Shown: positions 28,149 to 62,427 of the stretch, in pieces
How positions within the stretch are numbered: position 1 is the first letter of the stretch
How the letters are laid out: the number at the start of each line of letters is the position of its first letter
NCBI RefSeq assembly: GCF_003918875.1
Contig: NW_025766002.1
Location: 1,240,001-1,304,000, forward strand
Reading direction: 5' to 3'
DNA from: Haliotis rubra
Lineage: Eukaryota
Length of the DNA: 64,000 nucleotides
The notes under the pieces: model-generated
Database searches by the model: none
Told to the model about the DNA's origin: nothing
Seen by the model: the letters and a program-made list of their open reading frames with translations, nothing else
Position numbers and translations under genes: made by a program

Positions 28149-29582
28149 TCAGCACCACCCAGGACTCCAGGCGCCATTGAAATATTTGGGATTGGAAGCT
28201 GGATCTGGTGCTGGGTCTTGTGCTGGAACACGGCTCTTCTTGTACTCATCCAGCTTCTCTATCATCACTGCAGCTAGTTCTGGATACTTGGCTATTATGT
28301 CTACATGCTCTGTTGGATCCTCTGTGATGTTGAACATCATGTATGGCGGGAACTCCGTATCGTCAGCTTCATATACACTCATGTCCATTCCTAACTTTGG
28401 CAATGGTGCCCAGTTGTTATACTTGCCAGGACTTCCTTGTATAAGTTTCAGATGACCATGTCGGATAGCTGATGTATTTGTCATATCGTATATGTTGTAG
28501 ACAAATCCGTCCCGCTTGCTCTTCCCACCGTTAATGAGCATGTCGTACTGACTGACTCCGTCCATGTTCGGATCTGTGTTTTCTCCACCAGCCAGCTCCA
28601 ACAATGTCGGGTACCAGTCCACAGCATGCATCATTTCCGTGTTGACATAGCCCGTCTTCTTCAAGAGATTCTTACTGTAGATGAAAGCAGCTCCTTTCGT
28701 GCCCCCTTCCCACAACGTAGACTTAGCTCCTCGTAGAGGCAGATTGTTGGCTGCGTCAAAGTAAGGTCCACCATTGTCAGATGTGAACACAAGAAGTAAA
28801 TTATCCATAAACCCTTCTTCTTCAAGACTCTGAACAACCCTTCCAACAGCCTCGTCCAGGGCAGTTACCATACCACAATAAATCCTTCGGTTAATGGTCT
28901 CGATGTTCTTGTACATATCCTCAAACCTCTTGGGTACCTCGAGCGGTACATGCACAGACTGGAACGGCAGGTATAAGTATAATGGCTTGGATTTATCGTG
29001 AGTCTTGATGATTTCAATGGCACGTTCAGTGTACACATCTGCTGAATACTTCCCCTTGTCCTCTCTGTCCACCTCCTTATTTCTCCGGAAGTCCACACCA
29101 GTCATGTTCATTTCGGACCTCGTGTGATTGTAGTAGCCCTCCTTACCTGAATAATAGCCAACGAAAGAATCAAAGCCTCTTTCAGTTGGTGTGTACTTCC
29201 AGTTGCAGAATCCCAAATGCCATTTCCCAACGATATGAGTGGCGTAGCCCAAAGCTTTCATTCTCTGCGGTATGAGTGTGAAGTTTATCGGCAAGTACTT
29301 GGGTTCCACCACAAACACTACTTGATCCTGTAGTCCAGTGTGATAGGGATAGTATCCCGACATGAAGCAATTTCTGGAGGGTGAACACAGTGGCTGGACG
29401 TAAGAAGAGTTGAGGATGACACCAGCTTTGGCCAGTCTGTCCAGGTTAGGTGTGATCATGTCTGGATTGTGCCATCCAACGTCATTCCAGCCGAGGTCGT
29501 CAGCGACGATGAATACAACGTGAGGGGGACTACATGTCGCTAATGTAAAAGTCATTAGAAGGAAAATACCAGTGGAAATCAT
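28149..29582 (-). CDS. ARSB-like: Arylsulfatase B/I/J-like sulfatase, gene 1 (477 aa, intron-free CDS, signal peptide)
   Basis: First ATG at 29582 (the ORF track starts at a TTG). Hydrophobic N-terminus MISTGIFLLMTFTLATC. Motifs IVADDLG, CSPSR (FGly Cys), GKWHLG, RGFD, QSVHVP, SDNGG, RGAKSTLWEGG; C-terminus GAWSPGWC. Confidence 0.95.
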   Translation of the reverse strand: MISTGIFLLMTFTLATCSPPHVVFIVADDLGWNDVGWHNPDMITPNLDRLAKAGVILNSSYVQPLCSPSRNCFMSGYYPYHTGLQDQVVFVVEPKYLPINFTLIPQRMKALGYATHIVGKWHLGFCNWKYTPTERGFDSFVGYYSGKEGYYNHTRSEMNMTGVDFRRNKEVDREDKGKYSADVYTERAIEIIKTHDKSKPLYLYLPFQSVHVPLEVPKRFEDMYKNIETINRRIYCGMVTALDEAVGRVVQSLEEEGFMDNLLLVFTSDNGGPYFDAANNLPLRGAKSTLWEGGTKGAAFIYSKNLLKKTGYVNTEMMHAVDWYPTLLELAGGENTDPNMDGVSQYDMLINGGKSKRDGFVYNIYDMTNTSAIRHGHLKLIQGSPGKYNNWAPLPKLGMDMSVYEADDTEFPPYMMFNITEDPTEHVDIIAKYPELAAVMIEKLDEYKKSRVPAQDPAPDPASNPKYFNGAWSPGWC

Positions 29583-29870
29583 CTCACGTGTCCTCACCCA
29601 AAGGGTTTTACTGAGTAACAAAATTGATGTTAAGTAGACGACCTCACACCTCGACCCACAGGTCCGATAAGACTGAATCTACCACGTTGAAGTATATGTC
29701 GCAATACATGTCGACACGTCGATGTTATATATTATTCTGACCTGTTTGATAAGGAGAGTCCTTGTTTTAAGTGATTTATAGTTTCATATCAAAGTGATAA
29801 GGCCAAAGTGTAACTGGAAATCAGGGTCAGCCCTGTGCGGACATCTGTGCTCATGGGCACACTATTTATA

Positions 29871-30103
29871 TGGTAATAGTAACGTGTTTATGCTGATTCA
29901 AACAAAAACAAACTTAAAGTGGCATTTGGTAACAATTTACTAGCAATCTGATAGGAATACACACACAACTAGAATATCAACAGTTAAAATGGTAACTGTA
30001 GCATGTTTATTCTGATTCAAACAAAACAAACTTAAAGTGGCATTTGGTAACAATTTACCTGCAAACTGATAGGAATACACACACAACTAGAATATCAACA
30101 GTG
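29871..30103. repeat. ~119-bp tandem duplication upstream of gene 1
   Basis: tggtaa..tgtttat.ctgattcaaacaaaa..ctagaatatcaacagt occurs twice (29871-29984 and 29990-30103). Confidence 0.9.
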
Positions 30104-30204
30104 CCAGAAGGCATGGTCTCCATGTGTACGCCTCTAATCTGATTCTATTACATACACTCAAATGATGATCTGTGTGATTGTATGATCCACCACTGGCGAC
30201 CGCA

Positions 30205-30590
30205 TCAGTCAGTACCTGGTGTAGCCGCCCTCGCACGGAGAGCATCTACTCGTCGTCTCCTCATACTGGCAATCAAGCGTCAACTTCTCATTATCGGTAT
30301 ATCTGCCATTCCTGATGGAATACCTGTGTCGTACAGATGTTGATTAGAGGATCTCTAGCTAGAATTTGTTGTCCAAGATAGTACCAAAGAGTGAGTGAGT
30401 TAAGTTTTACGCCGCTTGTAGCAATATTCCAGCAATATCACGGCGGGGAACACCAGAAATGGGCTTCACGCATTGTACCCATGTGGGGAATCGAACCCGG
30501 GTCTTCGGCGTGACGAGCGAACGCTTTAACCACTAGGCTACCCCACCGCCCTTAGTACCAAAGATGTTAGATGGGGTTCATATTGGGTTA
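30205..30590 (-). mobile_element. Highly decayed Tc1 transposase 3' remnant interrupted by a SINE
   Basis: With the SINE removed, the - strand reads PNMNPI*HLW (SPDLNPIEHLW-like). The end tcagtacctggtg matches the Tc1 at 24975. Confidence 0.55.
30391..30552 (-). mobile_element. tRNA-derived SINE family 1, young full-length copy
   Basis: A and B boxes, (ACTC)n tail, perfect 12-bp TSD tagtaccaaaga at 30379-30390 and 30553-30564. Confidence 0.93.
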
Positions 30591-30880
30591 TGATAATATC
30601 GTCACTATTTTCAAACAATTGTTTTTCACATATTGCTGATCAGATATCATCATAAATATTGTGCTTACACTTGACTTCAAAGGGGACAATGGAATACAAT
30701 AAAGTGATCTATTGTATTCATCATCATACATCGAACTTTGTACGGTGAACCACAATCCCACTTATTCTCAACCCTCAAAATTCGATTTTAAACCATCAAA
30801 GGCAGCTTTTTTGTATTAAAATAAACATATACATGATGGCAGAATTGGTTTATTGAAAACAAATGCTCTACATCTAAGAG

Positions 30881-31045
30881 TGAGTGAGTGAGTTGGGTTT
30901 TACGCCGCTTTTAGCAATATTCCAGCAATATCACGGCGGGGGACACCAGAAATGGGCTTCATACAATGTGCCCATGTGGGGAATCGAACCCGGGCCTTCG
31001 GCGTGACGAGCGAACGCTTTAACCACAGGGCTACCCCACCGCCCC
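30881..31045 (-). mobile_element. tRNA-derived SINE family 1
   Basis: Near-identical to the 30391 copy; TSD ta(c/a)atctaagag. Confidence 0.93.
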
Positions 31046-31074
31046 TAAATCTAAGAGCTTAGACAGCCAAATTA

Positions 31075-31623
31075 TAGTCCGTTTGGCTCAAAAGTGGACC
31101 GATGAATTGCAATCTAATGCGAAAACTAATAAACAGAAAATATTCAATGAAACGCTGATCATAATCAAAACATCATACCCACTCTGTGAGGGTTTTGCAG
31201 AATTTTTGTCCTAAAAATGAAAAAGTTGTTTAACAATCTATCATTAAAATATTGACACAGTTCACTATTTGTTACGAGGGAGGAGTGCAGAGAAAAGGAC
31301 AGCCAGGTGTTAGAGAAGCACGTGCACAAGTACCGACAAAGTTATTGATTCATTAACCTGTGCTGTGCCGTCTCCATCCTTTCTCGAACACCTGGCTGTC
31401 CTTTTCTCTGCACTCCTTCCTCGTAACAAACAGTGAACTGTGTCAATATTTTAATGATAGATTGTTAAACAACTTTTTCATTTTTAGGACAAAAATTCTG
31501 CAAAACCCTCACAGAGTGGGTATGATGTTTTGATTATGATCAGCGTTTCATTGAGTATGTTATGTTTATTAGTTTTCGAGTTAGATTGCAATTCATAGGT
31601 CCACTTTTGAGCCAAACGGACTG
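31075..31623. mobile_element. Foldback MITE (Tc1/mariner-type): 243-bp inverted arms, 63-bp spacer
   Basis: 31075-31317 is the near-perfect reverse complement of 31381-31623; termini (t/c)agtccgtttgg flanked by TA. Confidence 0.9.
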
Positions 31624-31748
31624 TAGATATTGATGTTGGCGCTGTTCAGCCATTACACGCTTGTTCAAGCGTATCTTTCAAATGCGGATAAACATTTTGA
31701 AATGTAGATGTGTTCCTGCAGTAGTATGCTCGAGCAAGTGTCAATGTT

Positions 31749-31818
31749 CACAGCACAGCACAGCACAGCACAGCACAGCACAGCACCAGCACAACACAGC
31801 ACAGCACAGCACAGCACA
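31749..31818. repeat. (CAGCA)n pentanucleotide microsatellite
   Basis: Direct reading of the sequence. Confidence 0.9.
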
Positions 31819-32345
31819 AGACCCGGTAAAGAATTATCTAGGAGGTTTGCGATGTAAGGGAAGGAACTCTAATACCACAGAGCTCACGAAGCGTTAATAA
31901 AATCGTGTATTTGACTACAACACTGAATCAGCGTTCGGTTGTAGAGTTAATATCAGTGCTGTAAATTAAAGTTCAAGACCAGCTCACCACCAGCTCACCA
32001 CCAGCTCACCCAGTCACTGTTAATACTTCTCATTACACCTCCACTTCCTAGACTATTATGGACAACCATTACGGTAAGTTACAATACAGAAAATCGGGTG
32101 CAGTCATTTATGCACTTGTTCCAGGTGTATACTTTTGTTGGTGATCATAAAACAAACAAATAGAACACTCGTCTTGTTTTCCACAGTTGTCACACTGAAA
32201 CCGATGAAATGACTGATCGCTGCAATGTTTTTAATATTTGTGCATGTTTTCCTTGTGTCATTATGAATCGGAACATTTGCAGGACACATGTGTGTTAATC
32301 TGCTATCATATCTATAGACCAAACACGTTTCTAAACTATACTACT

Positions 32346-32521
32346 GACTGACTGACTCACTGACTGAGTTTGGTTTTACGCCGCTTTTAGCAACATTCCA
32401 GCAACACCATGGCGGGGGACACCAGAAATGGGCTTCACACATTGTACCCATGTGGGGATTCGAACCCGGGTCTTCGGCGTAACGGGCAAACGCTTTAACC
32501 ACTAGGCTACCCCACCGCCCC
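32346..32521 (-). mobile_element. tRNA-derived SINE family 1
   Basis: Consensus match; TSD tatactact at 32337-32345 and 32522-32530. Confidence 0.9.
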
Positions 32522-32528
32522 TATACTA

Positions 32529-32726
32529 CTCGTGAAGCACCGGGTTAGAATTGGTCTTTAGCAACCCATGCTTGTCGTAAAACACAACTAACGGGAACTG
32601 GTAGTCAGGCTCGCTGACTTGGTTGACACATGTCATCGTATCCCGATTGTGTAGATCTATGATCATGCTGTTGATCACTGGATTGTCTAGTCCAGACTCG
32701 ATTATTTACAGACCGCCGCCATATAG
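32529..32726 (+). mobile_element. SINE family 2, tail missing
   Basis: Colinear with 19010-19180. Confidence 0.8.
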
Positions 32727-36848: not shown

Positions 36849-38285
36849 ATGAGCCTCCTAAGAGCTGTTTTATTCTGGTTTGTTGTGACTTTCTGTGAGG
36901 GTGCGGAGAAACCTCACATTGTGTTTATCGTAGCTGATGACCTCGGATGGAACGATGTTGGATTCCGGAACCCTCAAATGATCACCCCTAACCTGGACAG
37001 ACTGGCCAAAGCGGGAGTCATCCTCAACTCATCTTACGTCCAGCCTCTATGCTCGCCCTCCAGAAGTTGTTTCATGTCGGGGTATTTCCCTTATCACACT
37101 GGTCTACAAGATGGCGTTGTAAGGATAAACGCAGCAAAATTCCTTCCTGCTAACTTAACAACAATCCCACAGAAACTGAAACAACTTGGTTATGATGCCC
37201 ACATGGTTGGGAAGTGGCACCTTGGCTTCTGTAACTGGAAGTATACACCCACAGAGAGAGGCTTTGACTCCTATCTTGGATTTTACTCTGGTGATGAGGA
37301 ATATTTTACTCACATGACAAATGATGGTAAAGGGGCACTGGATTTTCGCTTCAACAAAACTGCCTATAAAGATGCCAATGGAACCTATTCTGCAAATGTG
37401 TTTGGTAACAGGGCTGTTGAAATCATTGAGAACCACGACGATAGTAAGCCACTCTATCTGTACCTTCCATTCCAGGATGTTCACGGGCCTCTTGAGGTTC
37501 CACCTAAATATGAAAACATGTACAAGAACATAGAAAACCGAAAAAGAAGGATCTATTGTGGAATGGTGAGTGCTTTAGACGAAGCTGTTGGAAACATCAC
37601 GAAGGCATTAGAAGAAAAAGGTCTCATGGACAATCTATTGTTGGTCTTTACAACTGATAATGGTGGCCCTACATTTGTTGCTGCCAATAACTTGCCGTTA
37701 CGGGGAGCCAAAAATACTCTCTGGGAAGGAGGGACGAAAGGCACAGGGTTCATCTACAGTAAATCCCTTCTGAAGAAGACAGGCTACCTCAACACTGGAA
37801 TGATGCATGCTGTGGACTGGTACCCAACATTAGTGGAGTTGGCTGGTGGAGAAAACACTGATCCCAACATGGACGGAGTCAGTCAGTACGACATGCTCAT
37901 CAATGGTGGACCCAGCAAGCGAAATGAGTTCGTCTACAACATCTATGACGAGAGAGAAGCAGCTGCAATCAGGTACGGAGATCTCAAGCTCATGCAAGGC
38001 AGTCCGGGAGATCACAATGGTTGGGCTCCTTTACCACATTTGGGAATTGATGAAGATGTCTATGAAGCTGATAACCAAACGTTCCCTCCCTTCATGCTCT
38101 ACAACATCACTGCAGATCCAACCGAACACTTTGACCTCTCTTCCAAGTATCCTGATCTACTGGACATGATGAAGAAGAGGCTGGAGAACTGGAAGAAGTC
38201 TCGTGTTCCTGCCCAGAACGATTCCCCTGTTCCTGCATCGAACCCTAAGTACTTCGGTGGTGTATGGAGTCCTGGATGGTGTTGA
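36849..38285 (+). CDS. ARSB-like: Arylsulfatase B/I/J-like sulfatase, gene 2 (478 aa, intron-free CDS, signal peptide)
   Basis: Signal-like MSLLRAVLFWFVVTFCEG; motifs ADDLG, CSPSR, GKWHLG, RGFD, QDVHGP, TDNGG, RGAKNTLWEGG; AATAAA at 38384. Confidence 0.96.
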   Translation: MSLLRAVLFWFVVTFCEGAEKPHIVFIVADDLGWNDVGFRNPQMITPNLDRLAKAGVILNSSYVQPLCSPSRSCFMSGYFPYHTGLQDGVVRINAAKFLPANLTTIPQKLKQLGYDAHMVGKWHLGFCNWKYTPTERGFDSYLGFYSGDEEYFTHMTNDGKGALDFRFNKTAYKDANGTYSANVFGNRAVEIIENHDDSKPLYLYLPFQDVHGPLEVPPKYENMYKNIENRKRRIYCGMVSALDEAVGNITKALEEKGLMDNLLLVFTTDNGGPTFVAANNLPLRGAKNTLWEGGTKGTGFIYSKSLLKKTGYLNTGMMHAVDWYPTLVELAGGENTDPNMDGVSQYDMLINGGPSKRNEFVYNIYDEREAAAIRYGDLKLMQGSPGDHNGWAPLPHLGIDEDVYEADNQTFPPFMLYNITADPTEHFDLSSKYPDLLDMMKKRLENWKKSRVPAQNDSPVPASNPKYFGGVWSPGWC

Positions 38286-41034: not shown

Positions 41035-44000
41035 GAGTGAGTGAGTGAGTTATAATTTATCGTCACATCGGCAATATTTCAGCCATATCGTGACGAGAAC
41101 ATTTTATTGTTATACATAGTAATTTATGGTAAATTATAAAACTCTGTCATCGAAGGACAGTAAAACCGACTAGAATATCACAATATCAAGAAATAAAACT
41201 AGCATATATGTCTAAAATAGGATTTCAGATTAGGACAATACAAATATAAAAAAGGCTGAGGATCGCCAACAACCGATGGTAGACCACCACTCTAGGGACC
41301 ATGGGGACTTACAGTACTTTGGCTACCTGCATGGACCCTAGCTGGATTTATACCATCCCTTCAGCCATTGGCGATTGTACTGATAGTTAGCCATAATAAA
41401 ACAACAAATATTCTACGATTAAAAAAGTGTGTAGATCTGAATAGACTTTGAAAGTTTTGGGACTTACGTACCCTCCCAGTAGGACAATAATTTTACAGTA
41501 CTTTAACCCCCTGTGAGGGTACAGCCACTAACAATCTAAGTTACTAATCTAAACTACCAATCATTAAAATACATCTATCTACAGAACATATTAATCAGAA
41601 TTCATCAATGAAATCAATTTCTTTTAAAAAAACAACAATTAAATGAGTACTAACACTGGTAAAAGATCCTTAAGTGTTTTTACATTGAAATATTTATCCC
41701 TTATGATGGAGAATTCAACACAGTCAAGCAGGATATGCTTGACCGTGACTCCGTGACTCTCTCATCACAAGGGATACAAAACGGAGGATCTTCACCTTTT
41801 AACAAGTATTTGTGAGTATATCTAATATGGCCAATACGACATCGTCGCATGATGACCTCTTCAAATCTGGACTGACAACCCAAGTAGGTGTAACCGATAG
41901 TTGGTTTTATTTCATGTAATTTATTGATACCCACTTGGGTGTCCCACTTCTTCTGCATCAGATCACGGATGTAAGTTCTAATGGTAGCTTTGTAATCAGA
42001 GTAAGGAATGAGAAGTGGTGCCACAGATTTGTTGATCAGCCATTGTGTTCCCAGAAATACCAACGTGACTGGGTAACCAACAGAAGACGATGTCGTATTG
42101 GCCAGTAGCAACTTTTTGCTGTACAGATCCTCATAGAGGGGATGAAAGACACAGTTATATGCAGAGTTCGACTGATTAGAATATAGTTTAGTAATATACT
42201 GCAAAGATAATGTGATACGGGGTTGGTTTAGAGAAGGCTCGTCAGCTTCAACGTAAATACTATCAATAGGAGAAGTTCGGAAAGATCCAAGACAAAGTCT
42301 GAGACCTTGGCGATGAACAGAATCAAGTAGTTTCAAATTGCTTTTACAGGCTCCACCACATACGATTGAGCCATAATCAACTTTTGACCGGATGAGTGAT
42401 CTGTACAAATGAAGGAGGGTAGTTGATCCCCTCCCCACTTAGAATTGGACACGACTTTTAATAGATCTAATGCCTTCAGGCATTTAGTCTTCAAATACTT
42501 AATATGTGGTAAAAAGGTCAAATGTTTGTCGAAAATCAGTCCCAGAAACTTGACTTCCTTTACAACGTTAATTGGAGAGCCATCCAAGTACAGTTCGGGA
42601 TATTTATGAGGCTTATATTTCCGACAGAAATGTATACATTTGGTCTTTATCTGTGATAATTTAAAGCCATTCTCAAGTGACCATTTATGAATTTTATTTA
42701 AACACATCTGTAATTGTCTCTCGATGGTATGCATATTTTCACCACGACATGAAACGTTAAAATCATCCACAAACAATGACCCATCTATTGAGTCATTTAA
42801 TACTTTTGAGAGACTATTGATTTTTATGCTAAACAAAGTAACAGACAAAATACTGCCTTGTGGAACCCCCTGATCCTGATTATAATGGTCAGACAGGGTT
42901 GATCCAACACGAACTTGAAATTGCCTGTCTGATAAAGACTGTGATATAAAATGAGGCAAACCAAATTTCTTAAAATACCATGTTTCCAAAATCTCTTAAA
43001 ATACCATGTTTCCATGTTGTATCATAAGCTTTTTCTACATCGAAAAAGATTGAAACGGCATGCTGGTTATTTACAATGGAATTTTTAACGAATGATTTTA
43101 GTCGAACCAACTGGTCAATAGTGCTTCTATTTTTGCGAAAACCACATTAGATGTTAGTAATAAGATTATTGGATTCTAGAAACCATACTAATCTATTATT
43201 GACCATGCGTTCCATGGTCTTGCAAACGCAGCTAGTTAGTGAAATAGGTCTGTAGTTTGATGGATCTGTATGATCCCGGCCAGGCTTAAGTATTGGTACA
43301 ACAATGGCATGACACCACGAAGGCGGAAAGTGCCCTGTTGTCCAAATGTTCAGAAGTGTTTCAAGACATGCATTGGGTAAATGTTTCAGGAGCTGATAGT
43401 GGATATTATCAGCACCTGTTGCCGTATCATGAGCTTGCGCTAAGGCAGTATTCAGCTCATGTAGTGAAAATACTTCATTATAATCTTCACCATTATCAGA
43501 GTGAAAGTTAATTTTAAGTTTTTCGTGATGATCTTTATATTTCTGAAACTTTGGATTATAGTTTGATGAAGAAGAATGTGTAGCTAAAGTTTCACCCAAC
43601 TTGTTTGCAATTTCAATTTTATCAGTTAAAAGATCATGTCCATCTTTGAGATGATGAACACTAGAATTTCTACCTTTGCCCTTGATTCTCTGTATCATGT
43701 TCCACACCTTCGTCATTGGCGTACGGGAATAAATCTTTGATACAAAGTTCTTCCAAGACTGTCGTTTACTTTGTTTAAAAGGACGTCGAGCCTATGGCAT
43801 TGTTTATTTTAAAATTATTTAAATTGTGTACTGCAGGGTGACGGCAAAAGTATTTCTCTGCCTTCTTCCTACACTTCCTAGCTTGTTTACAATCGTCAGT
43901 AAACCATGGTTTACGAACATGTGGTTTAGCAGAAGCCTTAGGAATAGTTTCATCGGCAATATTATTCAGTTTAGCAGAGAACAACTCAATCGGATCTGAA

Positions 44001-47560: not shown

Positions 47561-49003
47561 ATGAGCCTCCTGTCAGCTGTATGTATTCTCTTGGCTTTTG
47601 GGATCTGTGAGTGTGCAGAGAAACCTCACATTGTTTTTATAGTTGCTGATGACCTTGGCTGGAACGATGTCGGATTTCGGAACCCTCAAATGATCACCCC
47701 TAACCTGGACAGACTGGCTAAAGCTGGTGTCATCCTCAACTCATCCTACGTCCAGCCTCTATGTTCGCCCTCCAGAAATTGTTTCATGTCGGGATATTTC
47801 CCGTATCACACAGGACTCCAAGATGGCGTTGTTGGGATAAACGCAGCAAAACATCTACCGGCCAAGCTAACAATAATACCACAGAAACTGAAACAACTTG
47901 GTTATGATGCCCACATTGTTGGAAAATGGCATCTTGGCTTCTGTAACTGGAAGTATACACCCACAGAGAGAAGCTTTGACTCCTATCTTGGATATTACTC
48001 TGGAATGGAGGACTATCTAACCCATATTATACAGGACCATGAAGGTAACGTGGGACTGGATTTTCGCTTCAACAAAACTGCCTATAGAGACGCCAACGGA
48101 ACCTATTCTACACATATATTTGCCAACAAGGCTGTTGAAATCATTGAGAACCACGACACCAGTAAGCCACTCTATCTGTACCTTCCATTCCAGGCTGTAC
48201 ATTCACCTCTTGAAGTTCCACCTAAATATGAAAATATGTACAAGAACATAGCAACTATGAATAGAAGGATTTATTGTGGAATGGTGAGTGCTTTAGACGA
48301 AGCTGTTGGCAATATCACTAAGGCATTAGAAGACAAAGGTCTCATGGACAATCTCCTGTTGGTCTTTACAACTGATAATGGTGGCCCTACATTTGTTGCT
48401 GCCAATAACCTGCCTTTACGAGGAGCCAAGGCTACACTATGGGAAGGGGGAACGAAAGGAACTGGATTCAGCTACAGTAAATCCCTCCTGAAGAAGACGG
48501 GCTACCTCAACACTGGAATGATGCATGCTGTGGACTGGTACCCGACATTGGTGGAGTTGGCTGGTGGAGAGAACACAGATCCCAACATGGACGGAGTCAG
48601 TCAGTACGACATGCTCATCAATGGTGGACCCAGCAAGCGGAATGAGTTCGTCTACAACATCTATGACGAGATTGATGCAGCTGCAATCAGGTACGGCGAT
48701 CTCAAACTCATGCAAGGCAGTCCGGGAGATCACAATGGTTGGGCTCCTTTGCCACATCTGGGAATTGATGAAGGTGTCTATGAAGCTGATAACCAAACAT
48801 TCCCTCCTTTCATGCTCTACAACATTACTGCAGATCCAACCGAACACTTCGACCTCTCTTCCAAGTATCCAGATCTACTGGACATGATGAAGAAGAGGCT
48901 GGAGAACTGGAAGAAGTCTCGTGTTCCGGCCCAAGACCCTACTCCGGTTCCTGCATCGAACCCGAAGTACTTTGGTGGTGTATGGAGTCCTGGATGGTGT
49001 TGA
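47561..49003 (+). CDS. ARSB-like: Arylsulfatase B/I/J-like sulfatase, gene 3 (480 aa, intron-free CDS, signal peptide)
   Basis: All core motifs present (CSPSR, GKWHLG, QAVHSP, TDNGG, RGAKATLWEGG); RGFD is changed to RSFD; AATAAA at 49115. Confidence 0.94.
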   Translation: MSLLSAVCILLAFGICECAEKPHIVFIVADDLGWNDVGFRNPQMITPNLDRLAKAGVILNSSYVQPLCSPSRNCFMSGYFPYHTGLQDGVVGINAAKHLPAKLTIIPQKLKQLGYDAHIVGKWHLGFCNWKYTPTERSFDSYLGYYSGMEDYLTHIIQDHEGNVGLDFRFNKTAYRDANGTYSTHIFANKAVEIIENHDTSKPLYLYLPFQAVHSPLEVPPKYENMYKNIATMNRRIYCGMVSALDEAVGNITKALEDKGLMDNLLLVFTTDNGGPTFVAANNLPLRGAKATLWEGGTKGTGFSYSKSLLKKTGYLNTGMMHAVDWYPTLVELAGGENTDPNMDGVSQYDMLINGGPSKRNEFVYNIYDEIDAAAIRYGDLKLMQGSPGDHNGWAPLPHLGIDEGVYEADNQTFPPFMLYNITADPTEHFDLSSKYPDLLDMMKKRLENWKKSRVPAQDPTPVPASNPKYFGGVWSPGWC

Positions 49004-51151: not shown

Positions 51152-51329
51152 NNNNNNNNNNNNNNNNNNNNNNNNNNNNNNNNNNNNNNNNNNNNNNNNN
51201 NNNNNNNNNNNNNNNNNNNNNNNNNNNNNNNNNNNNNNNNNNNNNNNNNNNNNNNNNNNNNNNNNNNNNNNNNNNNNNNNNNNNNNNNNNNNNNNNNNNN
51301 NNNNNNNNNNNNNNNNNNNNNNNNNNNNN
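51152..51329. other. Assembly gap between genes 3 and 4
   Basis: Run of N. Confidence 1.
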
Positions 51330-52658
51330 GCGCGCGCGCAAAAACAAAAAAGTCATCATGGTTTTTTTATTGAGAATATTATCAACAACAAGAGCAGAGG
51401 AGTGCGCCAAAAAGGAGGGGCGCGGAAATGACTCGCTTAACAATGCCAATACCAGACGTGACCACCATTTGCCTTGATAAAAGCGACAGAGGGCATTACA
51501 TGGTTGTACACAGCTTGAGGGATGATCTTCAAATTCCAACCAAAGATAGGCCAACCTTAGCTAGCTTTACCGACTGGTTCTGGTCCAGACGTTGTCGTCA
51601 TCCCAGGCATGTTCAATGGAACGAACGTCACCGGACGGCCATGGTAGTATAACAAGTAATACTGCCTCCATAAGTCTGTTACAACATGTGTAACGGCTGG
51701 ATGGGTATAATCCTGCATTAATGTAACGGTACGTCCCTGCATTTACACAAAGTGTACAACATGATCATGGCACCGTACGCCATTCAAATTGGCATTAACA
51801 AAGAAACATTTTACCTAACATCTGAAGACCTTGAGGAAACCTTGCATCGATAAAACATTCTCCTGAGACGCATGAAGACCCTTTCACGACCATGAGAACT
51901 GTCAAGATGAAACCTGGACTGATGTGTGAACAGTCTACTGTTCTAGTCTTGCCTTCTGAACTTCCGCTCGCGTCTTCATGAAACTAGGTGTTTCTGCCGG
52001 TGATGTGAAAACAAGAACTGGATGTCGGGACCGGATATTTTTCATTTTATCCCAGCTGACAGGACGGTTATAAGGCAAAGCAATACCGAGATACAACCAG
52101 CCCCAACTATGCTTCTAGATTTGTCAGCATCATACCCGAGACAAAGGTGCATATTCTTGTTCATTTGATTCGCCTCAAATTATGTTTCTGGGTTTACGAA
52201 CATCATACCCGTACACGTATTCGTGGGTTTCGCCAAAAAACTTCAAAGATATTCAGAACTTTGGGGTTTCCTTCCAGATTAACCTGAGACTCCATGATAT
52301 AAATGGAATGCTGTTCAAGCTGCGTTAAATCCAACTCACTCACTCACTCACTCACTCACTCATTCATTCACTCCAAATCACCAAACCACCCACCCACTTT
52401 GTGTTGTGCACTGAAAACATTTTGTAACTGTGTTCGCCAAACTTTAGGAAGCTTGTATGTTAAAGTTATCTTTAAAATATTAAAATGTAAAACATTTATC
52501 TTTGCAACATCTGCATAGAGTGTAAGGTGTATGTCTTGACAAGTGAAATATCCAGCTGGTAATCTGAAAGAATGCGTCCTTCAGGCTTGTCGTGACATGC
52601 ATTATCTATAGAAAACATTTAAATAGAATCACAATGTATGATACTGAGCAGAAGCAAA

Positions 52659-54107
52659 ATGAGTGTCCAAAGAGCTGTTTTGTTCTGGATTGTTGGAACT
52701 TTTGTTATCTGTGAGTGTGTGGAGAAACCTCATATTGTGTTTATCGTAGCTGATGACCTCGGATGGAACGATGTCGGATTCCGGAACCCTCAAATGATCA
52801 CCCCTAACCTGGACAGACTGGCCAAAGCTGGTGTCATCCTCAACTCATCTTACGTCCAGCCTCTATGCTCGCCCTCCAGAAGTTGTTTCATGTCCGGGTA
52901 TTTTCCGTATCACACTGGTCTACAAGATAGCGTTGTTAAGATAAACGCAGCAAAATTCCTTCCGGCTAACTTAACAACAATCCCGCAGAAACTGAAACAA
53001 CTTGGTTATGATGCCCACATGGTTGGGAAGTGGCACCTTGGCTTCTGTAACTGGAAGTATACACCCACAGACAGAGGCTTTGACTCCTACCTTGGATATT
53101 ACGCTGGAACGGAGAATTATTTTACTCACATTAGAAAGGATGACGAAGGTAACGTGGGACTGGATTTTCGCCTCAACAAAACTGCCTATAGAGACGCCAA
53201 CGGAACCTATTCTACACATATATTTGCAAACAAGGCCGTTGAAATCATTGAGAACCACGACAATAGTAAGCCACTTTATCTATACCTTCCTTTCCAGGCG
53301 GTACATGAACCTCTTCAAGTTCCACCTAAATATGAAAACATGTACAAGAACATAGAAACCATAAATAGAAGGATATATTGTGGAATGGTAACTGCGTTAG
53401 ACGAAGCTGTAGGAAATATCACTAAGGCATTAGAAGACAAAGGTCTCATGGACAATCTACTGTTGATCTTTACAACTGATAATGGTGGTCCCACATTTAT
53501 TGCTGCCAATAACCTGCCTTTACGGGGAGCCAAACATACTCTCTGGGAAGGGGGAACGAAAGGAACTGGATTCATCTACAGTAAAACCCTTCTGAAGAAA
53601 ACGGGCTACCTCAACACTGGAATGATGCATGCTGTGGACTGGTACCCTACTTTGGTGGAGCTGGCCGGTGGTGAAAACACAGATCCCAACATGGACGGAG
53701 TCAGTCAGTACGATATGCTGATCAATGGTGGACCCAGCAAGCGGAATGAGTTCGTCTACAACATCTATGACGAGATTGATGCAGCTGCAATCAGGTACGG
53801 AGATCTCAAGCTCATGCAAGGGAGTCCAGGAATTCACAATGGTTGGGCTCCTTTGCCACATCTGGGAATTGATGAAGGTGTCTATGAAGCTGATAACCAA
53901 GTGTTCCCTCCCTTCATGCTCTACAACATTACTGCAGATCCAACCGAACACTTCGACCTCTCAGCCAAGTATCCTGATCTTCTGGACATGATGAAGAAGA
54001 GGCTGGTGAACTGGAAGAAGTCTCGTGTTCCTGCCCAGAACAATTCTCCTGTTCCTGCATCCTACCCCAAGAACTTCGGTGGCGTATGGAGTCCTGGGTG
54101 GTGTTGA
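52659..54107 (+). CDS. ARSB-like: Arylsulfatase B/I/J-like sulfatase, gene 4 (482 aa from the paralog-aligned ATG; in-frame upstream ATG at 52638)
   Basis: Signal-like MSVQRAVLFWIVGTFVICEC; motifs CSPSR, GKWHLG, RGFD, QAVHEPLQVP (close to human ARSB QSVHEPLQVP), RGAKHTLWEGG. Confidence 0.95.
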   Translation: MSVQRAVLFWIVGTFVICECVEKPHIVFIVADDLGWNDVGFRNPQMITPNLDRLAKAGVILNSSYVQPLCSPSRSCFMSGYFPYHTGLQDSVVKINAAKFLPANLTTIPQKLKQLGYDAHMVGKWHLGFCNWKYTPTDRGFDSYLGYYAGTENYFTHIRKDDEGNVGLDFRLNKTAYRDANGTYSTHIFANKAVEIIENHDNSKPLYLYLPFQAVHEPLQVPPKYENMYKNIETINRRIYCGMVTALDEAVGNITKALEDKGLMDNLLLIFTTDNGGPTFIAANNLPLRGAKHTLWEGGTKGTGFIYSKTLLKKTGYLNTGMMHAVDWYPTLVELAGGENTDPNMDGVSQYDMLINGGPSKRNEFVYNIYDEIDAAAIRYGDLKLMQGSPGIHNGWAPLPHLGIDEGVYEADNQVFPPFMLYNITADPTEHFDLSAKYPDLLDMMKKRLVNWKKSRVPAQNNSPVPASYPKNFGGVWSPGWC

Positions 54108-55171: not shown

Positions 55172-55393
55172 AAAGTATGTATCTGAAGTACTGTTTCATT
55201 GAACTTCTGTATCAGTAAAATTGGCTGAAATTCAATGGAATACATACATGATATTGCTGATCGGATAGGAGGCTCAGCATCACTTTTTAACGACGTGCTG
55301 AACGTGCGACTCGAGTTGACACTTAGTTTATATCCGCGCACAGTAATACCAGGCATATCATTCCTTGTTAGTCGTATTCTTCTTATTAATTAA

Positions 55394-57629: not shown

Positions 57630-57672
57630 CCTGGATATGAGCGCCATATGCAGCCTTATGTTGACTCTTTTT

Positions 57673-58152
57673 GTCATGAATCTTTAGGCATAGATAAATA
57701 CGTTACACATTATCTCCTTTAGTTCAGGTTCAGATTGGACATTTCTGTTTGAACGAATTTGTAAGGACCTTTGGAATGGGTACATATTCATGTTTTAGAG
57801 TCCAACCAAAAGTTGGTAGTGTCGATGAAAGGTTTTTGCAGAATACTCAGTTATCACACTGGCCTTACAGTATTTAATATGACACTTATAATAAGCTATT
57901 TGATAAAGGATTAATGTAGTGATTTGTGGTGAGTCGTTTCGTCATGAATCTTTAGGCATAGACATAAATATGAAGAGTGCTTTAGTTCAAGTTCAGATGG
58001 TACATTTGCTGGACCATCCAGCAATATATTTGAATATGTTTGAACGAATTTGTTTGGACCTTTGGAATGCATACGCTTCAGGTTTTAGAGTCAAGCAAAA
58101 AGCTGATAGTGCCTATGAACGGTTTTGGCAGAATTCTTCCTCAGTTATATCA
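57673..58152. repeat. Diverged local duplication (~190-210 bp, two copies)
   Basis: gtcatgaatctttaggcataga..ctttagttca..tttgaacgaatttgt..ggacctttggaatg..tcagttat at 57673 and 57941. Confidence 0.85.
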
Positions 58153-58500
58153 CATGTGGCATTATTTGATGACAGTAGGCTGGGACGGAAACAAATATGG
58201 GCCCGAATCTAATGATTAGCCGAATATCTTCATTTTCACGTACACCGACAGATGCATCGGATCACACTACATGAGACATCCAAATTCAATAATCAGCTAT
58301 CGTTTAAAACGTTTCCACAATATCCCGGTTTAATATAAACCAGTGCTAAAAAGAAACTATACACCGCAAAATATTACATAAAATTCAAAAAAATATAAAT
58401 GATGTCATAACACCATACTGAGCCATGTCACACACGTACAGACCCATCATTTCCGGGAACAAACGGCGAAACAAGTTAACGAATCGCCTAAACTGTCGAG

Positions 58501-58660
58501 TGAGTGAGTGAGTTTAGTTTTACGCCGCACTCAGCAATATTCCGGATATATGGCAACGGTCTGTAAATAATCGAGTCTGGACCAGACAATCCAGTGAACA
58601 ACAACATGAGCATCGATCTGCGCAACTGGGAACCGAGGACATGTATCAACCAAGTCAGCG
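58501..58660 (-). mobile_element. SINE family 2, 5'-truncated, inserted into a Tc1 remnant
   Basis: Perfect 15-bp TSD gcctaaactgtcgag at 58486-58500 and 58661-58675. Confidence 0.9.
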
Positions 58661-58675
58661 GCCTAAACTGTCGAG

Positions 58676-58975
58676 AGCTGTCGGAATGGCCCAACAAGGA
58701 GCTGACCACACCGTCATTGCCAGAACCTGCGAATGCACCCGAGCACCTGTCATCAGACTGGTGCAACAACTAAAACAAAAACAGGTAATACATCAGACTG
58801 GCCTAGGAGTGGTCGACCAAGTGTGACAACGGCCGGCGATGATCGCCACATCCGGACAATTCATCTAAGAAATCGTTTTATAACGGCGACGGCATTAGGA
58901 TACCGTATCTGTCGACATACAGTGTACCGGCGACAAAGCGAACATGGTATTCGAGCACGTCGACCCAACAGCTGA
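58676..58975 (+). mobile_element. Tc1 transposase N-terminal (HTH) remnant
   Basis: AVGMAQQG..VIAR..TGNTSDWPRSGRPSVTTAGDDRHIRTIHLRNRF; frameshifted and homologous to 35576-35932. Confidence 0.8.
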
Positions 58976-60984
58976 GTGCACTGTTGAGCTCACAACTAGT
59001 TAATACCAAAAATTAGCATGCTATCAGAAGGGCACGAAGAGGTTAGCCTTTTCGCGAACACCTTGTGTAATCCCTGAGTTTCAATGATCCATTTATTGTT
59101 TTTACACAGCTTTTTTACTCTTACACCAAATGGAATCTGTTTCTGAGGATAGACCTGGTTTTCTATTATTTATAGATGTCCTGTCCTTTCAACAATAACC
59201 CCCTACACAAGGCGACCAATGTGCCCGTGTTGCTGTATACCCAGACAGGTGAGGTAAGGGATATCACGCCTGGGATATAATAATAAACAGTGCATTTATG
59301 ATGCGCTAATCTCACTAGGTGAATGCTCATAGCGCTACGAATCTGATTATTATAACCCCGGACAACCCAAGATGCGTGTGAGGCGCTAGAAGGTTAATAG
59401 TGGCATGACTTATCACACTCTATACCCATTTTCTAGTGGGTGAACAGAGGCAATTTTGAACAAACTCACTTTCCTAAGGTGAGACCACATGTATCACATG
59501 TGCTTCGTCACGGGGCAGGAGTCAAGCTGCAAAACATGGTCACCCATCCATGGACTCTCCGCGCTCAACGTTGCTTAACGTCAACTGATTTGTGACCTGT
59601 GCTGTATGCATAGGACCACACACCACCATATATATATATATGTTTGGGTTAGGTTTAAAGTACACATCATTTCCCTTAATCTCTTGGGAGTAGTGAAACA
59701 AATGACGCCACATATTTAATAATATGAATAGGTTTTGTGGTACCAGCACAAACACATGTTGTGGCAAGTCAACTGGCTATATAGATCCGTTTGAGTGCAT
59801 TACCTAACTGATAAGTGATATGACTCATTGATTGAGAGACTGTTCTTTCACATAAAGACAATTGATTTTCCCTTCAACAATCGTACTAATCTGAAAATAT
59901 GTGATCATGTACCAGTCAGATTAATGAGCACGATGAAGGCCCCAGGTCTCCCGGATATGACAACACACGACTATCAAACTACTATCAAACTCACAGAGCC
60001 TCATCACATTGGTTTTAATATATTTATTTCAACTTCGTGTTATACAGCGTATAGGATGTTCGCCGTAGATTTTCCAAAGTATAAACATCAATGAATACCA
60101 GTACAGAAACAGATGACAGGCTGAAGCTATTCATGGTATGATTTGCACATATAATTAACTTAATAAATATCAGAAGATATTATACATGAAATACTATTTT
60201 GAGTGGTTCAGAATACAGGATGTCCTCCGTACATTTTACAGAGAATAAACATCAATGAATACTAGAACAGATACAGATGGCAGGCTGAAGCTATTCATGA
60301 CATGATGGTCTTGCAAGAGTAAAAGCCTTGGGGACCCAACATTCATCCCAGTCGTGTCTATATGTTTCCAAATAGGTAGTTCATTTAGGAACAATTAATC
60401 GGAGATTTTGCAACTACAGGGCATTCAACGTTATTCATTTTGAAACGCGAACACATATACATGTACATAAAAATACATAACCACCAAACACACATTCACA
60501 GGTATTGCTTTTGAAAGCTCAGTACCACCAGGATGAAGTACAACATGGCGCACATGTTTCCCCAGAGAAAGATCAGCTGTCTTAAACAGCTTTCAGATTC
60601 TTGTATTTAATTAAATAAGCGTAATTTGGATAGCTAGCACGATAACACTGTCTTTCTGATATAGATCAGTTCTTTCACAATTTATCACCCATCGCATTCT
60701 TAGAAACAATCAAACACATCTGAAAAAGTTCCACACATGCATCCAGCAACAGGTATGTTAGAATAGAATATTTCATACAACGTTTCACTGATGCCATGTT
60801 ACCATGTACAGGTATAATGTTTTTAGTTACGTTGACGACATCAGCACAGATTCCATGGTATGTGCCTTGACCAGTAGATTATCTAGATGGTAACCATACT
60901 GAAAGAACGCATGTCGTCACGATTGTCTTATCTATCACAAACATACCTAGAGAAGCACAATGTGCCATATTGAGCAGAAGAAAA

Positions 60985-62427
60985 ATGAGCCTCCTACGAG
61001 CTGTATGTATTCTCACGACTTTTGTGATCTGTGAGTGTGCGGAGAAACCTCACATTGTTTTCATAGTTGCGGATGACCTCGGTTGGAACGATGTTGGATT
61101 CCGGAACCCTCAAATGATCACACCTAATCTGGACAGACTGGCCAAAGCGGGAGTCATCCTCAACTCCTCTTACGTCCAGCCTCTATGTTCGCCCTCCAGA
61201 AACTGCTTCATGTCGGGGTATTTCCCGTATCACACTGGACTACAAGATGGCGTTATTCAGACAGAGGCAGCACAATTCCTTCCTGTCAACCTGACAACAA
61301 TCCCTCAGAAACTGAAACAACTTGGCTATGATACTCACATGGTTGGAAAGTGGCATCTAGGTTTCTGTAACTGGAAGTATACACCTACAGAGAGAGGCTT
61401 TGACACCTATCTTGGATATTACTCTGGAATGGAGGACTATTTTACTCACATATCACAGAATCACGGAGGTGACATGGGACTGGATTTTCACTTCAATAAA
61501 ACTGCCTACAGAGACGCCAATGGTACATATTCTGCACATTTGTTTGCAGACAGAGCCATTGAAATCATCGACAACCACGATAAAAGCAAGCCACTTTATA
61601 TGTACCTCCCATTCCAGTCGGTACATGAACCTCTTGAAGTTCCGCCCAAATATGAAAACATGTACAAGAACATAGAAACCAAAAAAAGAAGGATATATTG
61701 TGGAATGGTGACAGCGTTAGACGAAGCTGTTGGCAATATCACTAGGACATTAGAAGAAAAAGGGCTTATGGACAATCTACTATTAGTCTTTACAACTGAT
61801 AATGGTGGTCCTACGTATAAAGCTGCTAATAACTTGCCTTTGCGAGGTGCCAAGGCTACACTATGGGAAGGGGGAACGAAAGGAACTGGATTCATCTACA
61901 GTAAATCCCTTCTCAAGAAGACGGGCTACCTCAACACTGGAATGATGCATGCTGTGGACTGGTACCCGACATTGGTGGAGTTGGCTGGTGGAGAGAACAC
62001 AGATCCCAACATGGACGGAGTCAGTCAGTACAACATGCTCATCAATGGTGGAGCCAGCAAGCGAAATGAGTTCGTCTACAACATCTATGACGAGATTGAT
62101 GCAGCTGCAATACGGTACGGAGATCTTAAGCTCATCCAAGGCAGTCCAGGAGCTCACAATGGTTGGGCTCCTTTGCCACATCTGGGAATTGATGAAGGTG
62201 TCTATGAAGCTGATAACCAAACGTTCCCTCCCTTCATGCTCTACAACATCACTGCAGATCCAACCGAACACTTCGACCTCTCAGCCATGTACCCTGAGCT
62301 GGTGGACATGATGAAGAAGAGGCTAGAAATCTGGAAACAGTCTGGTGTTCCGGCGCAGGACAATTCTAGTATTCCTGCAGCAAACCCAAAATACTATGAC
62401 GGTGTATGGAGCCCAGGCTGGTGTTAA
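60985..62427 (+). CDS. ARSB-like: Arylsulfatase B/I/J-like sulfatase, gene 5 (480 aa, intron-free CDS, signal peptide)
   Basis: ATG at 60985; MSLLRAVCILTTFVICEC; motifs CSPSR, GKWHLG, RGFD, QSVHEP, RGAKATLWEGG, GVWSPGWC; AATAAA near 62500. Confidence 0.96.
   Translation: MSLLRAVCILTTFVICECAEKPHIVFIVADDLGWNDVGFRNPQMITPNLDRLAKAGVILNSSYVQPLCSPSRNCFMSGYFPYHTGLQDGVIQTEAAQFLPVNLTTIPQKLKQLGYDTHMVGKWHLGFCNWKYTPTERGFDTYLGYYSGMEDYFTHISQNHGGDMGLDFHFNKTAYRDANGTYSAHLFADRAIEIIDNHDKSKPLYMYLPFQSVHEPLEVPPKYENMYKNIETKKRRIYCGMVTALDEAVGNITRTLEEKGLMDNLLLVFTTDNGGPTYKAANNLPLRGAKATLWEGGTKGTGFIYSKSLLKKTGYLNTGMMHAVDWYPTLVELAGGENTDPNMDGVSQYNMLINGGASKRNEFVYNIYDEIDAAAIRYGDLKLIQGSPGAHNGWAPLPHLGIDEGVYEADNQTFPPFMLYNITADPTEHFDLSAMYPELVDMMKKRLEIWKQSGVPAQDNSSIPAANPKYYDGVWSPGWC

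What the first reader, a model, noticed from the sequence alone, without database searches (positions are those of the whole stretch)
28700..62170. Paralog differences concentrate beside catalytic residues and in pocket loops
Seen, in order of genes 1-5. After GLQD: QVVFVVE / GVVRINA / GVVGINA / SVVKINA / GVIQTEA. Loop: SGKEGYYNHTRSEMNM / SGDEEYFTHMTNDGK / SGMEDYLTHIIQDHEG / AGTENYFTHIRKDDEG / SGMEDYFTHISQNHGG. QxVHxP: SVHV / DVHG / AVHS / AVHE / SVHE. GGP: YFD / TFV / TFV / TFI / TYK. RGAKx: S / N / A / H / A. SPG: KY / DH / DH / IH / AH. Long intervening blocks are invariant. Established: the His of VHxP and the Lys of RGxK are catalytic (ARSB H242 and K318). Inference: diversifying selection on substrate recognition, including charge changes, on a fixed catalytic core.
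Basis: partly seen in the sequence, partly recalled or inferred. Interest (0 to 1): 0.75.

Follow-up and report, generated by a model that had tools for sequence, protein, structure and literature searches.

The report
Abalone sulfatase paralogs with fast-evolving pocket loops
An abalone carries a tandem array of intron-free sulfate-removing enzyme genes whose catalytic residues never change while a few loop positions change faster than silent sites, which fits duplicated digestive enzymes being retuned to different sulfated seaweed sugars, although no substrate has been tested.

Summary
The N gap (51152-51329) lies between genes 3 and 4 and touches no gene.

I added 12 paralogs from the same array and from H. 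rufescens. The rest of the protein is under strong purifying selection (dN/dS 0.11).

Codon site models reject neutrality (M2a vs M1a, p 2.5e-17). Recombination is demonstrable, but the signal survives separate trees for 5 segments (p 7e-10) and 10 segments (p 1e-4). Sites 92 and 388 pass every run; 149 and 159 pass the single-tree and 5-segment runs.

In the one-to-one gene-1 orthologue pair the same patch codons are tightly conserved (dN/dS 0.06 at dS 0.53). They are therefore not intrinsically free loops.

Two limits remain. Pocket location rests on homology mapping to published sulfatase complexes, because model coordinates could not be read. Variable sites are also not enriched next to catalytic residues in linear sequence.

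The idea has precedents (mollusc ARSB duplications, Plutella glucosinolate sulfatases). This scan already noted the same pattern in an IDS-like sulfatase array of this genome.

The parts
28149..29582 (-). g1: divergent, inverted ARSB-like sulfatase gene at the head of the array (477 aa, single exon)
   Evidence: ORF and translation. Pfam Sulfatase E 1e-59. It has a 1:1 orthologue in H. rufescens in the same inverted position (P0139, L007), with dS 0.53 and dN/dS 0.06.
36849..38285 (+). g2: ARSB-like sulfatase gene (478 aa); the reference for residue numbers in this report
   Evidence: Pfam Sulfatase E 3e-53. Human ARSB 1FSU E 5e-111. AF2 model pLDDT 93, TM 0.90 to 1FSU.
47561..49003 (+). g3: ARSB-like sulfatase gene (480 aa)
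51152..51329 (.). assembly gap (N run), intergenic between g3 and g4
   Evidence: it overlaps no ORF and was left unfilled
52659..54107 (+). g4: ARSB-like sulfatase gene (482 aa from the ATG at 52659; an in-frame ATG also lies at 52638)
60985..62427 (+). g5: ARSB-like sulfatase gene (480 aa)
37113..37133 (+). g2 residues 89-95, the hypervariable loop after GLQD. Site 92 has 10 amino-acid states among 17 paralogs.
   Evidence: Translation. P(omega>1) is 0.99-1.00 in all three tree schemes. By residue count and HMMER alignment it corresponds to the loop carrying Trp79 in S1_16 (PMC11760155), Phe103 in S1_19B (PMC6923384, alignment), Asn117 in endoVB4SF (PMC6581707) and Tyr108/Gln111 in GALNS (PMC5926073).
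37287..37334 (+). g2 residues 147-162, a hypervariable and indel-prone loop after strand 141-145. Sites 149, 157 and 159 score as selected.
   Evidence: Translation. Sites 149 and 159 have P>0.95 with one tree and with 5 segment trees; site 157 only with one tree. By count from the catalytic His it corresponds to GALNS Cys165/Tyr170/Arg175 (PMC5926073).
37476..37487 (+). g2 residues 210-213 (D-V-H-G): catalytic His212 flanked by variable positions 210 and 213
   Evidence: Translation. Site 213 has 7 states, with the third codon base kept. The residue after the catalytic His is listed among pocket residues of endoVB4SF (Ser264; PMC6581707).
37671..37679 (+). g2 residues 275-277 (T-F-V) in the loop after metal ligands D270/N271. 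Site 277 has 8 states including D, R and K.
   Evidence: The homologous loop 266-276 of S1_16, with Glu270, sits at the S0 sugar site (PMC11760155).
37713..37715 (+). g2 residue 289, directly after catalytic Lys288 (N/D/T/A/H/S among paralogs)
   Evidence: Corresponds to endoVB4SF Asn357 and GALNS Gln311 (PMC6581707, PMC5926073).
38010..38015 (+). g2 residues 388-389 after SPG, in the C-terminal subdomain. Site 388 is the most robust selected site.
   Evidence: Translation. P(omega>1) is 0.96-1.00 in all tree schemes. Its position relative to the pocket was not established.

Best explanation
The window holds the head of a large tandem array of single-exon genes, with at least 13 copies per species. 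They encode formylglycine-dependent S1 sulfatases whose closest solved relative is human arylsulfatase B, and they carry an N-terminal signal-peptide-like segment. All copies keep the complete sulfate-binding and catalytic apparatus: two Asp, the Cys-x-Pro-x-Arg motif, Lys/His, His, Asp/Asn and Lys. All should therefore hydrolyse sulfate esters by the same mechanism. In the expanded clade (g2-g5 and their relatives), roughly two dozen positions evolve at or above the neutral rate. They lie in the loop after GLQD, the 147-162 loop, the residues flanking the catalytic His and Lys, the loop after the metal ligands, and after SPG. A handful of them (92 and 388 in every run; 149 and 159, and 157 on one tree) evolve several-fold faster than silent sites. 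The scaffold meanwhile is held by purifying selection and is partly homogenised by gene conversion. The most likely reading is diversifying selection on the sugar-binding subsites, giving the abalone a set of sulfatases with different preferences among sulfated algal polysaccharides in its diet. Shown: gene integrity, the invariant core, site-specific dN/dS above 1, constraint on the same sites in the gene-1 lineage, and recombination. Inferred: that the sites line the pocket, that they change substrate preference, and that the enzymes are digestive.
For: Family and fold: Pfam Sulfatase; 1FSU E 5e-111; model TM 0.90 to 1FSU. Core: 11 catalytic or motif residues are invariant in 28 proteins. 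Selection on 17 paralog CDS: M0 omega 0.21; M2a vs M1a LRT 76.4; M8 vs M7 87.2; M8 vs M8a 53.6. With 5 segment trees the LRT is 42.1, p 7e-10. With 10 segment trees and the indel loop removed it is 18.2, p 1.1e-4. All other codons give 0.11, and other window-variable codons give 0.25-0.33. pS at the hypervariable codons is 0.32 against 0.34 elsewhere. Those codons typically keep their third base while bases 1-2 change. Gene-1 orthologues have dS 0.53; dN/dS is 0.06 overall and 0.06 at the patch codons (Fisher p 5e-4). Pocket mapping comes from PMC6923384, PMC6581707, PMC11760155 and PMC5926073. The general rule is that the S subsite is invariant and the carbohydrate-binding regions vary (PMC10154612). 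Mollusc ARSB proteins are found in the hepatopancreas (PMC5159873).
Against: Recombination is significant (PHI z -6.3) and can inflate site-model tests; the LRT falls from 76 to 18 as the trees are split. The class-level confidence interval touches 1. Within the window's own g2-g5, the patch dN/dS is 0.95. Model coordinates were not readable, so no distance to the active site was measured. The position of site 388 and of the C-terminal variable sites relative to the pocket is unknown. Variable sites are not enriched near catalytic residues in linear sequence. There are no expression data by tissue: only guessed-RNA contigs from a relative. There are no substrate data.
Confidence: 0.6

Rival explanations
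1. Relaxed constraint only. After massive duplication the copies are redundant, so a few surface loops drift neutrally (omega about 1). The apparent omega above 1 would be an artefact of recombination, alignment uncertainty in the indel loop, and picking the most variable columns.
For: M2a assigns 13-18% of codons to omega = 1 and only 0.5-1% to omega above 1. The LRT shrinks as trees are split. The class-level confidence interval includes 1. Tree-wide dS is large, so neutral sites would also look hypervariable.
Against: The same codons have dN/dS 0.06 in the gene-1 orthologue pair over dS 0.53, so they are not intrinsically free. The rest of each duplicated gene keeps dN/dS 0.11, so any relaxation would have to be confined to these loops. 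The LRT remains significant with 10 independent trees and with the indel loop excluded. Other low-confidence loops, such as 390-410, are not hypervariable.
Confidence: 0.25
2. Gene-conversion mosaic. The invariant blocks are simply stretches recently homogenised among copies, and the variable patches are leftover unconverted segments, with no selection on the pocket.
For: The PHI test is positive. Splitting into 5 trees gains 417 lnL units. Within H. rubra, pS drops to about 0.20 in codons 295-434 against 0.27-0.37 between species. Framework trees split by species. pS between g1 and the rest dips at codons 46-90 and 316-375.
Against: Invariant amino-acid blocks still carry pS of 0.2-0.37 among g2-g5, so they are held by purifying selection. 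The hypervariable codons do not have raised synonymous divergence (0.32 against 0.34), as older unconverted remnants would. Third codon positions are conserved where first and second positions differ.
Confidence: 0.1
3. Selection is real but is not about the dietary substrate. The loops might diversify to escape algal sulfatase inhibitors, to alter pH or stability optima, or for a non-digestive role such as handling the animal's own glycans or larval or reproductive functions.
For: No tissue or substrate data were obtained (one search found no run on record as RNA). Charge-changing replacements would fit inhibitor escape as well.
Against: The mapped loops are the ones that contact the leaving-group sugar in solved sulfatase complexes. 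Mollusc ARSB paralogs are found in the digestive-gland proteome (PMC5159873).
Confidence: 0.05

Closest known systems
Human arylsulfatase B (N-acetylgalactosamine-4-sulfatase, PDB 1FSU)
   Same: Closest solved structure: E 5e-111, 41% identity, TM 0.90. All ten active-site residues are conserved. Same two-subdomain fold and a signal peptide.
   Different: ARSB is a single lysosomal gene with eight exons (PMC4750586). Here there are 13 or more single-exon tandem copies, with variable residues next to His242, Lys318 and in neighbouring loops. The substrate is unknown.
Mollusc ARSB gene duplications seen in the digestive gland (scallop, sea hare; PMC5159873)
   Same: Multiple ARSB-like genes in algae-eating molluscs. 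The proteins are detected in hepatopancreas, and the authors propose adaptation to diverse algal food with different pocket shapes.
   Different: That work gives phylogeny and alignments only, with no test of selection, and it stresses the C-terminal region. Here site-specific dN/dS, a second species and an orthologue control are provided for abalone.
Plutella xylostella glucosinolate sulfatases GSS1-3 (reviewed in PMC10375594)
   Same: Clustered duplicated S1 sulfatases of a herbivore gut that diverged under positive selection to different substrate ranges.
   Different: Three insect genes derived from a Sulf C ancestor that act on plant defence compounds, with measured activities. The abalone array is far larger, ARSB-like, subject to gene conversion, and biochemically untested.
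Bacterial carbohydrate sulfatases of SulfAtlas family S1 (S1_19 carrageenan G4S sulfatases, S1_16)
   Same: Next-best structural matches (TM 0.77-0.80). They follow the same principle: an invariant S subsite, with specificity set by variable loops and a few C-terminal-subdomain residues (PMC10154612, PMC9096561).
   Different: Only about 28-31% identical. Their diversity is spread over subfamilies and species, not generated within one tandem array of about 90%-identical genes.
IDS-like sulfatase array of the same genome (scan note s1-329470)
   Same: Tandem, intron-free sulfatase paralogs differing mainly in predicted substrate loops.
   Different: A different sulfatase subfamily and locus. 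I did not examine it.

Membership tests
S1 formylglycine-dependent sulfatases (Pfam PF00884) | Significant match to the Sulfatase profile | tested here: met
   E 2.6e-53 (g2) and 1.1e-59 (g1), both far above the cut-off
S1 formylglycine-dependent sulfatases (Pfam PF00884) | C-x-P-x-R signature with the Cys that becomes formylglycine | tested here: met
   CSPSR is present in all five genes and in all 28 family proteins
S1 formylglycine-dependent sulfatases (Pfam PF00884) | Metal ligands D, D, D, N and sulfate-binding K, H, H, K | tested here: met
   D30, D31, D270, N271, R72, K122, H124, H212 and K288 are invariant and align with the ARSB residues listed in PMC7404199
S1 formylglycine-dependent sulfatases (Pfam PF00884) | Two-subdomain alkaline-phosphatase-like fold | tested here: met
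   AF2 model pLDDT 93; Foldseek TM 0.90, rmsd 2.5 A to 1FSU
S1 formylglycine-dependent sulfatases (Pfam PF00884) | Actual conversion of Cys to formylglycine, and sulfatase activity | not testable with these tools
   Needs protein chemistry
Arylsulfatase B orthologue (GalNAc-4-sulfatase) | Closest relative among characterised sulfatases is ARSB | tested here: met
   1FSU is the best PDB hit by 56 orders of magnitude. Sources name the relatives arylsulfatase B/I/J-like.
Arylsulfatase B orthologue (GalNAc-4-sulfatase) | One-to-one orthology and GalNAc-4-sulfate specificity | tested here: not met
   13 or more lineage-specific paralogs per abalone species, with different residues at positions flanking H212 and K288. 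Specificity is untested, so the genes are 'ARSB-like', not ARSB.
Gene family under diversifying (positive) selection | A site class with omega above 1 fits significantly better than nearly neutral models | tested here: met
   M2a/M1a LRT 76.4, M8/M7 87.2, M8/M8a 53.6
Gene family under diversifying (positive) selection | The signal is robust to recombination | tested here: met
   LRT 42.1 with 5 segment trees and 18.2 (p 1e-4) with 10. It is weakened but not lost. This was my own implementation, not codeml or HyPhy.
Gene family under diversifying (positive) selection | dN/dS above 1 at sites defined independently of the test data | tested here: inconclusive
   1.40 [0.87-2.38] and 1.69 [1.03-3.07]: the point estimates exceed 1 but the lower bounds sit at about 1
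Gene family under diversifying (positive) selection | Selected sites lie in the ligand-binding surface | tested here: inconclusive
   Only homology and count-based mapping to published complexes.

The most novel reading that the evidence does not exclude
Abalone keep a repertoire of 13 or more ARSB-like sulfatases per species. Gene conversion keeps the scaffold uniform within a species, while selection diversifies, and in part preserves across species, about 10-25 pocket residues. This would be a two-speed architecture like that of immune or venom gene arrays, here aimed at the chemical diversity of sulfated seaweed glycans. The hint: scaffold trees split by species (96-98% support), yet combinations of hypervariable residues are shared across species more than chance (maximum 0.63 identity, p 0.013).
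Probability: 0.3. Interest if true: 0.7.

Novelty: new member of a known kind. Interest (0 to 1): 0.55.

Why it matters
If the fast sites do set substrate preference, the array is a natural mutational scan of a eukaryotic carbohydrate sulfatase pocket on a nearly constant scaffold. About 26 enzymes that are roughly 90% identical differ mainly at a few positions. That would make specificity determinants of S1 sulfatases directly testable, and these are hard to predict from sequence (PMC11760155 says so explicitly). It would also offer candidate enzymes for tailoring fucoidan, carrageenan or ulvan sulfation, and it would give a molecular handle on how a generalist marine herbivore copes with chemically diverse algae. 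The same positions flank His242 and Lys318 of human ARSB, so they may also inform how ARSB, ARSI and ARSJ differ.

Tried and rejected
1. Measuring distances from variable sites to the active site. The AF2 model has pLDDT 93, but its coordinates are not exposed to scripts, so I used literature mapping instead.

2. Aligning the C-terminal tail to the S1_19B aromatic-shelf tyrosines. By sequence, only the helix 413-453 aligns to S1_19 structures, so the tail sites 458, 460 and 463 stay unplaced.

3. The 'beside catalytic residues' claim as a general linear-sequence enrichment. It was tested and is not significant.

4. The idea that the patches are older, unconverted remnants. Rejected, because their synonymous divergence equals the background.

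5. The idea that the gap disrupts a gene. Rejected.

6. RNA evidence. No run on record as RNA holds the gene. Contigs of small, guessed-RNA runs from another organism cover only the CDS at about 90% identity. That fits transcripts of relatives but proves nothing about this genome or any tissue.

7. The GALNS structure paper could not be fetched by the id I tried; a citing paper was used instead.

8. The equivalence of site 149 to Ser150 of arylsulfatase A is from memory only and could not be confirmed in the library, so I do not rely on it.

9. The large representative protein search was not run, because relatives were abundant in the word search.

Full report
WHAT IS THERE. The window is from Haliotis rubra: the proteins it encodes sit on a 9.43 Mb H. 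rubra contig. It contains five intact, single-exon ORFs of 477-482 codons. They are g1 28149-29582 (minus strand) and g2 36849-38285, g3 47561-49003, g4 52659-54107 and g5 60985-62427 (plus strand). All match Pfam Sulfatase (E 1e-53 to 1e-59). Their best solved relative is human arylsulfatase B, 1FSU (E 5e-111). An AlphaFold model of g2 (pLDDT 93) superposes on 1FSU with TM 0.90. The next-best matches are bacterial galactose-4-sulfate carrageenan sulfatases of subfamily S1_19. The first 20 residues are hydrophobic and precede the point where the mature ARSB chain starts to align, so a signal peptide is likely; this is inference.

THE GAP. The N run at 51152-51329 lies between g3 and g4. It is 2.1 kb after one stop codon and 1.3 kb before the next start. 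No gene or comparison in this report crosses it. I did not try to fill it and cannot say whether sequence is missing there.

THE OBSERVATION. Variable residues are clustered more than chance: the dispersion index is 2.03 against 0.80 for shuffles, p<0.0002. One part of the title does not hold generally. In linear sequence, variable sites are not enriched within six residues of the ten catalytic residues. Only positions 210, 213, 275-277 and 289 are truly 'beside' them. The other hot spots are two loops (89-95 and 147-162) and the residue after SPG (388).

MORE COPIES. The array is much larger than the window. Exact look-ups and cluster lists give at least 13 close paralogs in H. rubra and 13 in H. 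rufescens. I fetched DNA for 12 further full-length copies: 5 from H. rubra and 8 from H. rufescens, of which one was dropped as broken. g1 has a one-to-one orthologue in H. rufescens (P0139), in the same inverted position at the head of the array. The same columns are hypervariable in all copies. Site 92 has 10 amino-acid states among 17 genes, site 277 has eight and site 213 has seven. All 11 catalytic or motif residues are invariant in 28 proteins.

IS IT SELECTION? Whole-gene dN/dS among g2-g5 is 0.13-0.17, so the genes are functional and mostly constrained. I wrote a Goldman-Yang codon likelihood program and fitted site models to 17 paralogs.
- M0 omega is 0.21.
- M2a against M1a gives LRT 76.4 (p 2.5e-17), with 1.1% of codons at omega 5.6.
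- M8 against M7 gives LRT 87.2, and M8 against M8a gives 53.6, with 3.6% of codons at omega 2.6.

Recombination is clearly present (PHI z -6.3) and is known to inflate such tests, so I refitted with independent trees per segment.
- Five segments: LRT 42.1, p 7e-10; sites 92, 149, 159 and 388 have P>0.95.
- Ten segments, with the indel-prone loop and the signal peptide removed: LRT 18.2, p 1.1e-4; sites 92 and 388 remain.

A TREE-FREE, NON-CIRCULAR CHECK. dN/dS is 1.40 [0.87-2.38] in 13 non-window genes and 1.69 [1.03-3.07] among the eight H. rufescens paralogs. All other codons give 0.11, and other window-variable codons give 0.25-0.33. Synonymous divergence at the hypervariable codons (0.32) equals the background (0.34). 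So they are neither mutational hot spots nor older unconverted remnants. Many of them keep the third base while the first two change, for example xxA at 213, xxG at 92 and xxT at 388.

THE KEY CONTROL. Are these loops simply unconstrained? No. In the g1 orthologue pair (dS 0.53), dN/dS is 0.06 overall and 0.06 at the same 25 patch codons: 2 replacement against 6 silent changes, Fisher p 5e-4. The positions matter to the protein when the gene has a fixed role. They run fast only in the expanded clade, whose scaffold is nevertheless conserved. This argues against plain relaxation. My reading is that a few sites are under positive selection and the remaining patch sites evolve at about the neutral rate.

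GENE CONVERSION. The invariant blocks are not only constraint. Within H. rubra, pS falls to about 0.20 over codons 295-434, against 0.27-0.37 between species. pS between g1 and the rest dips at codons 46-90 and 316-375. Splitting the tree by segment gains 417 lnL units. Scaffold trees with the hypervariable columns removed separate the two species with 96-98% support. So the arrays either expanded after the split or are homogenised within species. Even so, invariant amino-acid blocks among g2-g5 still carry pS of 0.2-0.37, so purifying selection is also at work. Combinations of hypervariable residues are shared across species slightly more than chance (maximum 0.63, p 0.013).

ARE THE SITES IN THE POCKET? 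I could not read the model coordinates, so this is only partly tested. Published structures of relatives place the homologous segments at the sugar-binding subsites.
- Loop after the formylglycine helix (residues 89-95 here): it carries Trp79, the wall of the 0 subsite in S1_16 (PMC11760155); Phe103 of the -1 subsite shelf in S1_19B (PMC6923384, aligned next to residue 90); Asn117 in endoVB4SF (PMC6581707); and Tyr108/Gln111 in GALNS (PMC5926073).
- Residues directly after the catalytic His and Lys (213 and 289 here): they are listed as pocket residues in endoVB4SF (Ser264, Asn357), and Gln311 is the equivalent in GALNS.
- Loop after the Asp/Asn metal ligands (275-277 here): it is the 'specific loop near the active site pocket', with Glu270, in S1_16.
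- GALNS docking contacts Cys165, Tyr170 and Arg175: by count from the catalytic His these fall in the 147-157 loop.

The patches at 147-162, 210-213 and 275-277 directly follow beta-strands 141-145, 202-208 and 263-269 of the model. That is the carboxyl edge of the sheet, where the S1 active site lies (PMC6581707). Site 388 and the tail sites 458-463 could not be placed. Reviews state the general rule: the sulfate site is invariant and the carbohydrate-binding regions vary and set specificity (PMC10154612, PMC9096561).

FUNCTION. The likely role is digestive desulfation of algal polysaccharides. This is inferred from the herbivorous host, the signal-peptide-like N terminus, and ARSB paralogs found in the scallop hepatopancreas proteome (PMC5159873). 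No run on record as RNA holds the gene. Small, guessed-RNA assemblies from another organism cover only the CDS at about 90% identity, which is suggestive at best.

NOVELTY. The principle is known. Mollusc ARSB duplications were proposed as a dietary adaptation (PMC5159873). Plutella glucosinolate sulfatases are duplicated S1 sulfatases that diverged under positive selection (PMC10375594). This scan already noted hypervariable loops in an IDS-like sulfatase array of the same genome (s1-329470). I found no paper testing selection in the abalone ARSB-like array. I class this as a new member of a known kind, of moderate interest.

Noticed in passing
window 14967-18402: A 3.4 kb minisatellite: a 21-bp unit in about 163 copies (63-bp higher-order period, 79-82% matches). 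It produces the spurious 426-aa repetitive ORF at 15758-17038 and the strong GC and AT skew in this stretch.
   Followed up: partly
window 42333-43716 (-): Two ORF fragments match reverse transcriptase (RVT_1; E 4e-15 and 2e-4). This is a degraded retroelement in the 9 kb spacer between g2 and g3.
   Followed up: partly
window 28149-62427; loci L001-L007: Every copy of the family examined is a single uninterrupted ORF, whereas human ARSB has eight exons (PMC4750586). The family may descend from a retrocopy that was then tandemly amplified. The scan note on the IDS-like array also says 'intron-free'.
   Followed up: no
L003 17893-19320 (same gene at L006 3036-4463): One H. rufescens array member is broken. 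The ORF ends after 280 codons, and the annotated 374-aa product (P0013) skips the region from after the 190s helix to the catalytic Lys. It is probably a pseudogene within the array.
   Followed up: no
window 28149-29582 (-) and L007 10001-11434: g1 and its H. rufescens orthologue both sit inverted at the head of the array, so this conserved synteny predates the species split (dS 0.53). Scaffold trees of the downstream copies split by species.
   Followed up: partly
g2 residues 458-463 (window 38220-38237) and equivalents: The C-terminal tail just before the invariant SPGWC end is a further variable patch: sites 458, 460 and 463 have 4-6 states. In other S1 sulfatases the C-terminal region helps shape the pocket (PMC5159873, PMC9096561), but the tail could not be aligned to any solved complex.
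   Followed up: partly
P0009 and P0003 (loci L002, L003): Two paralogs change the residue before the catalytic Lys: RGCK and RGSK instead of RGAK.
   Followed up: no
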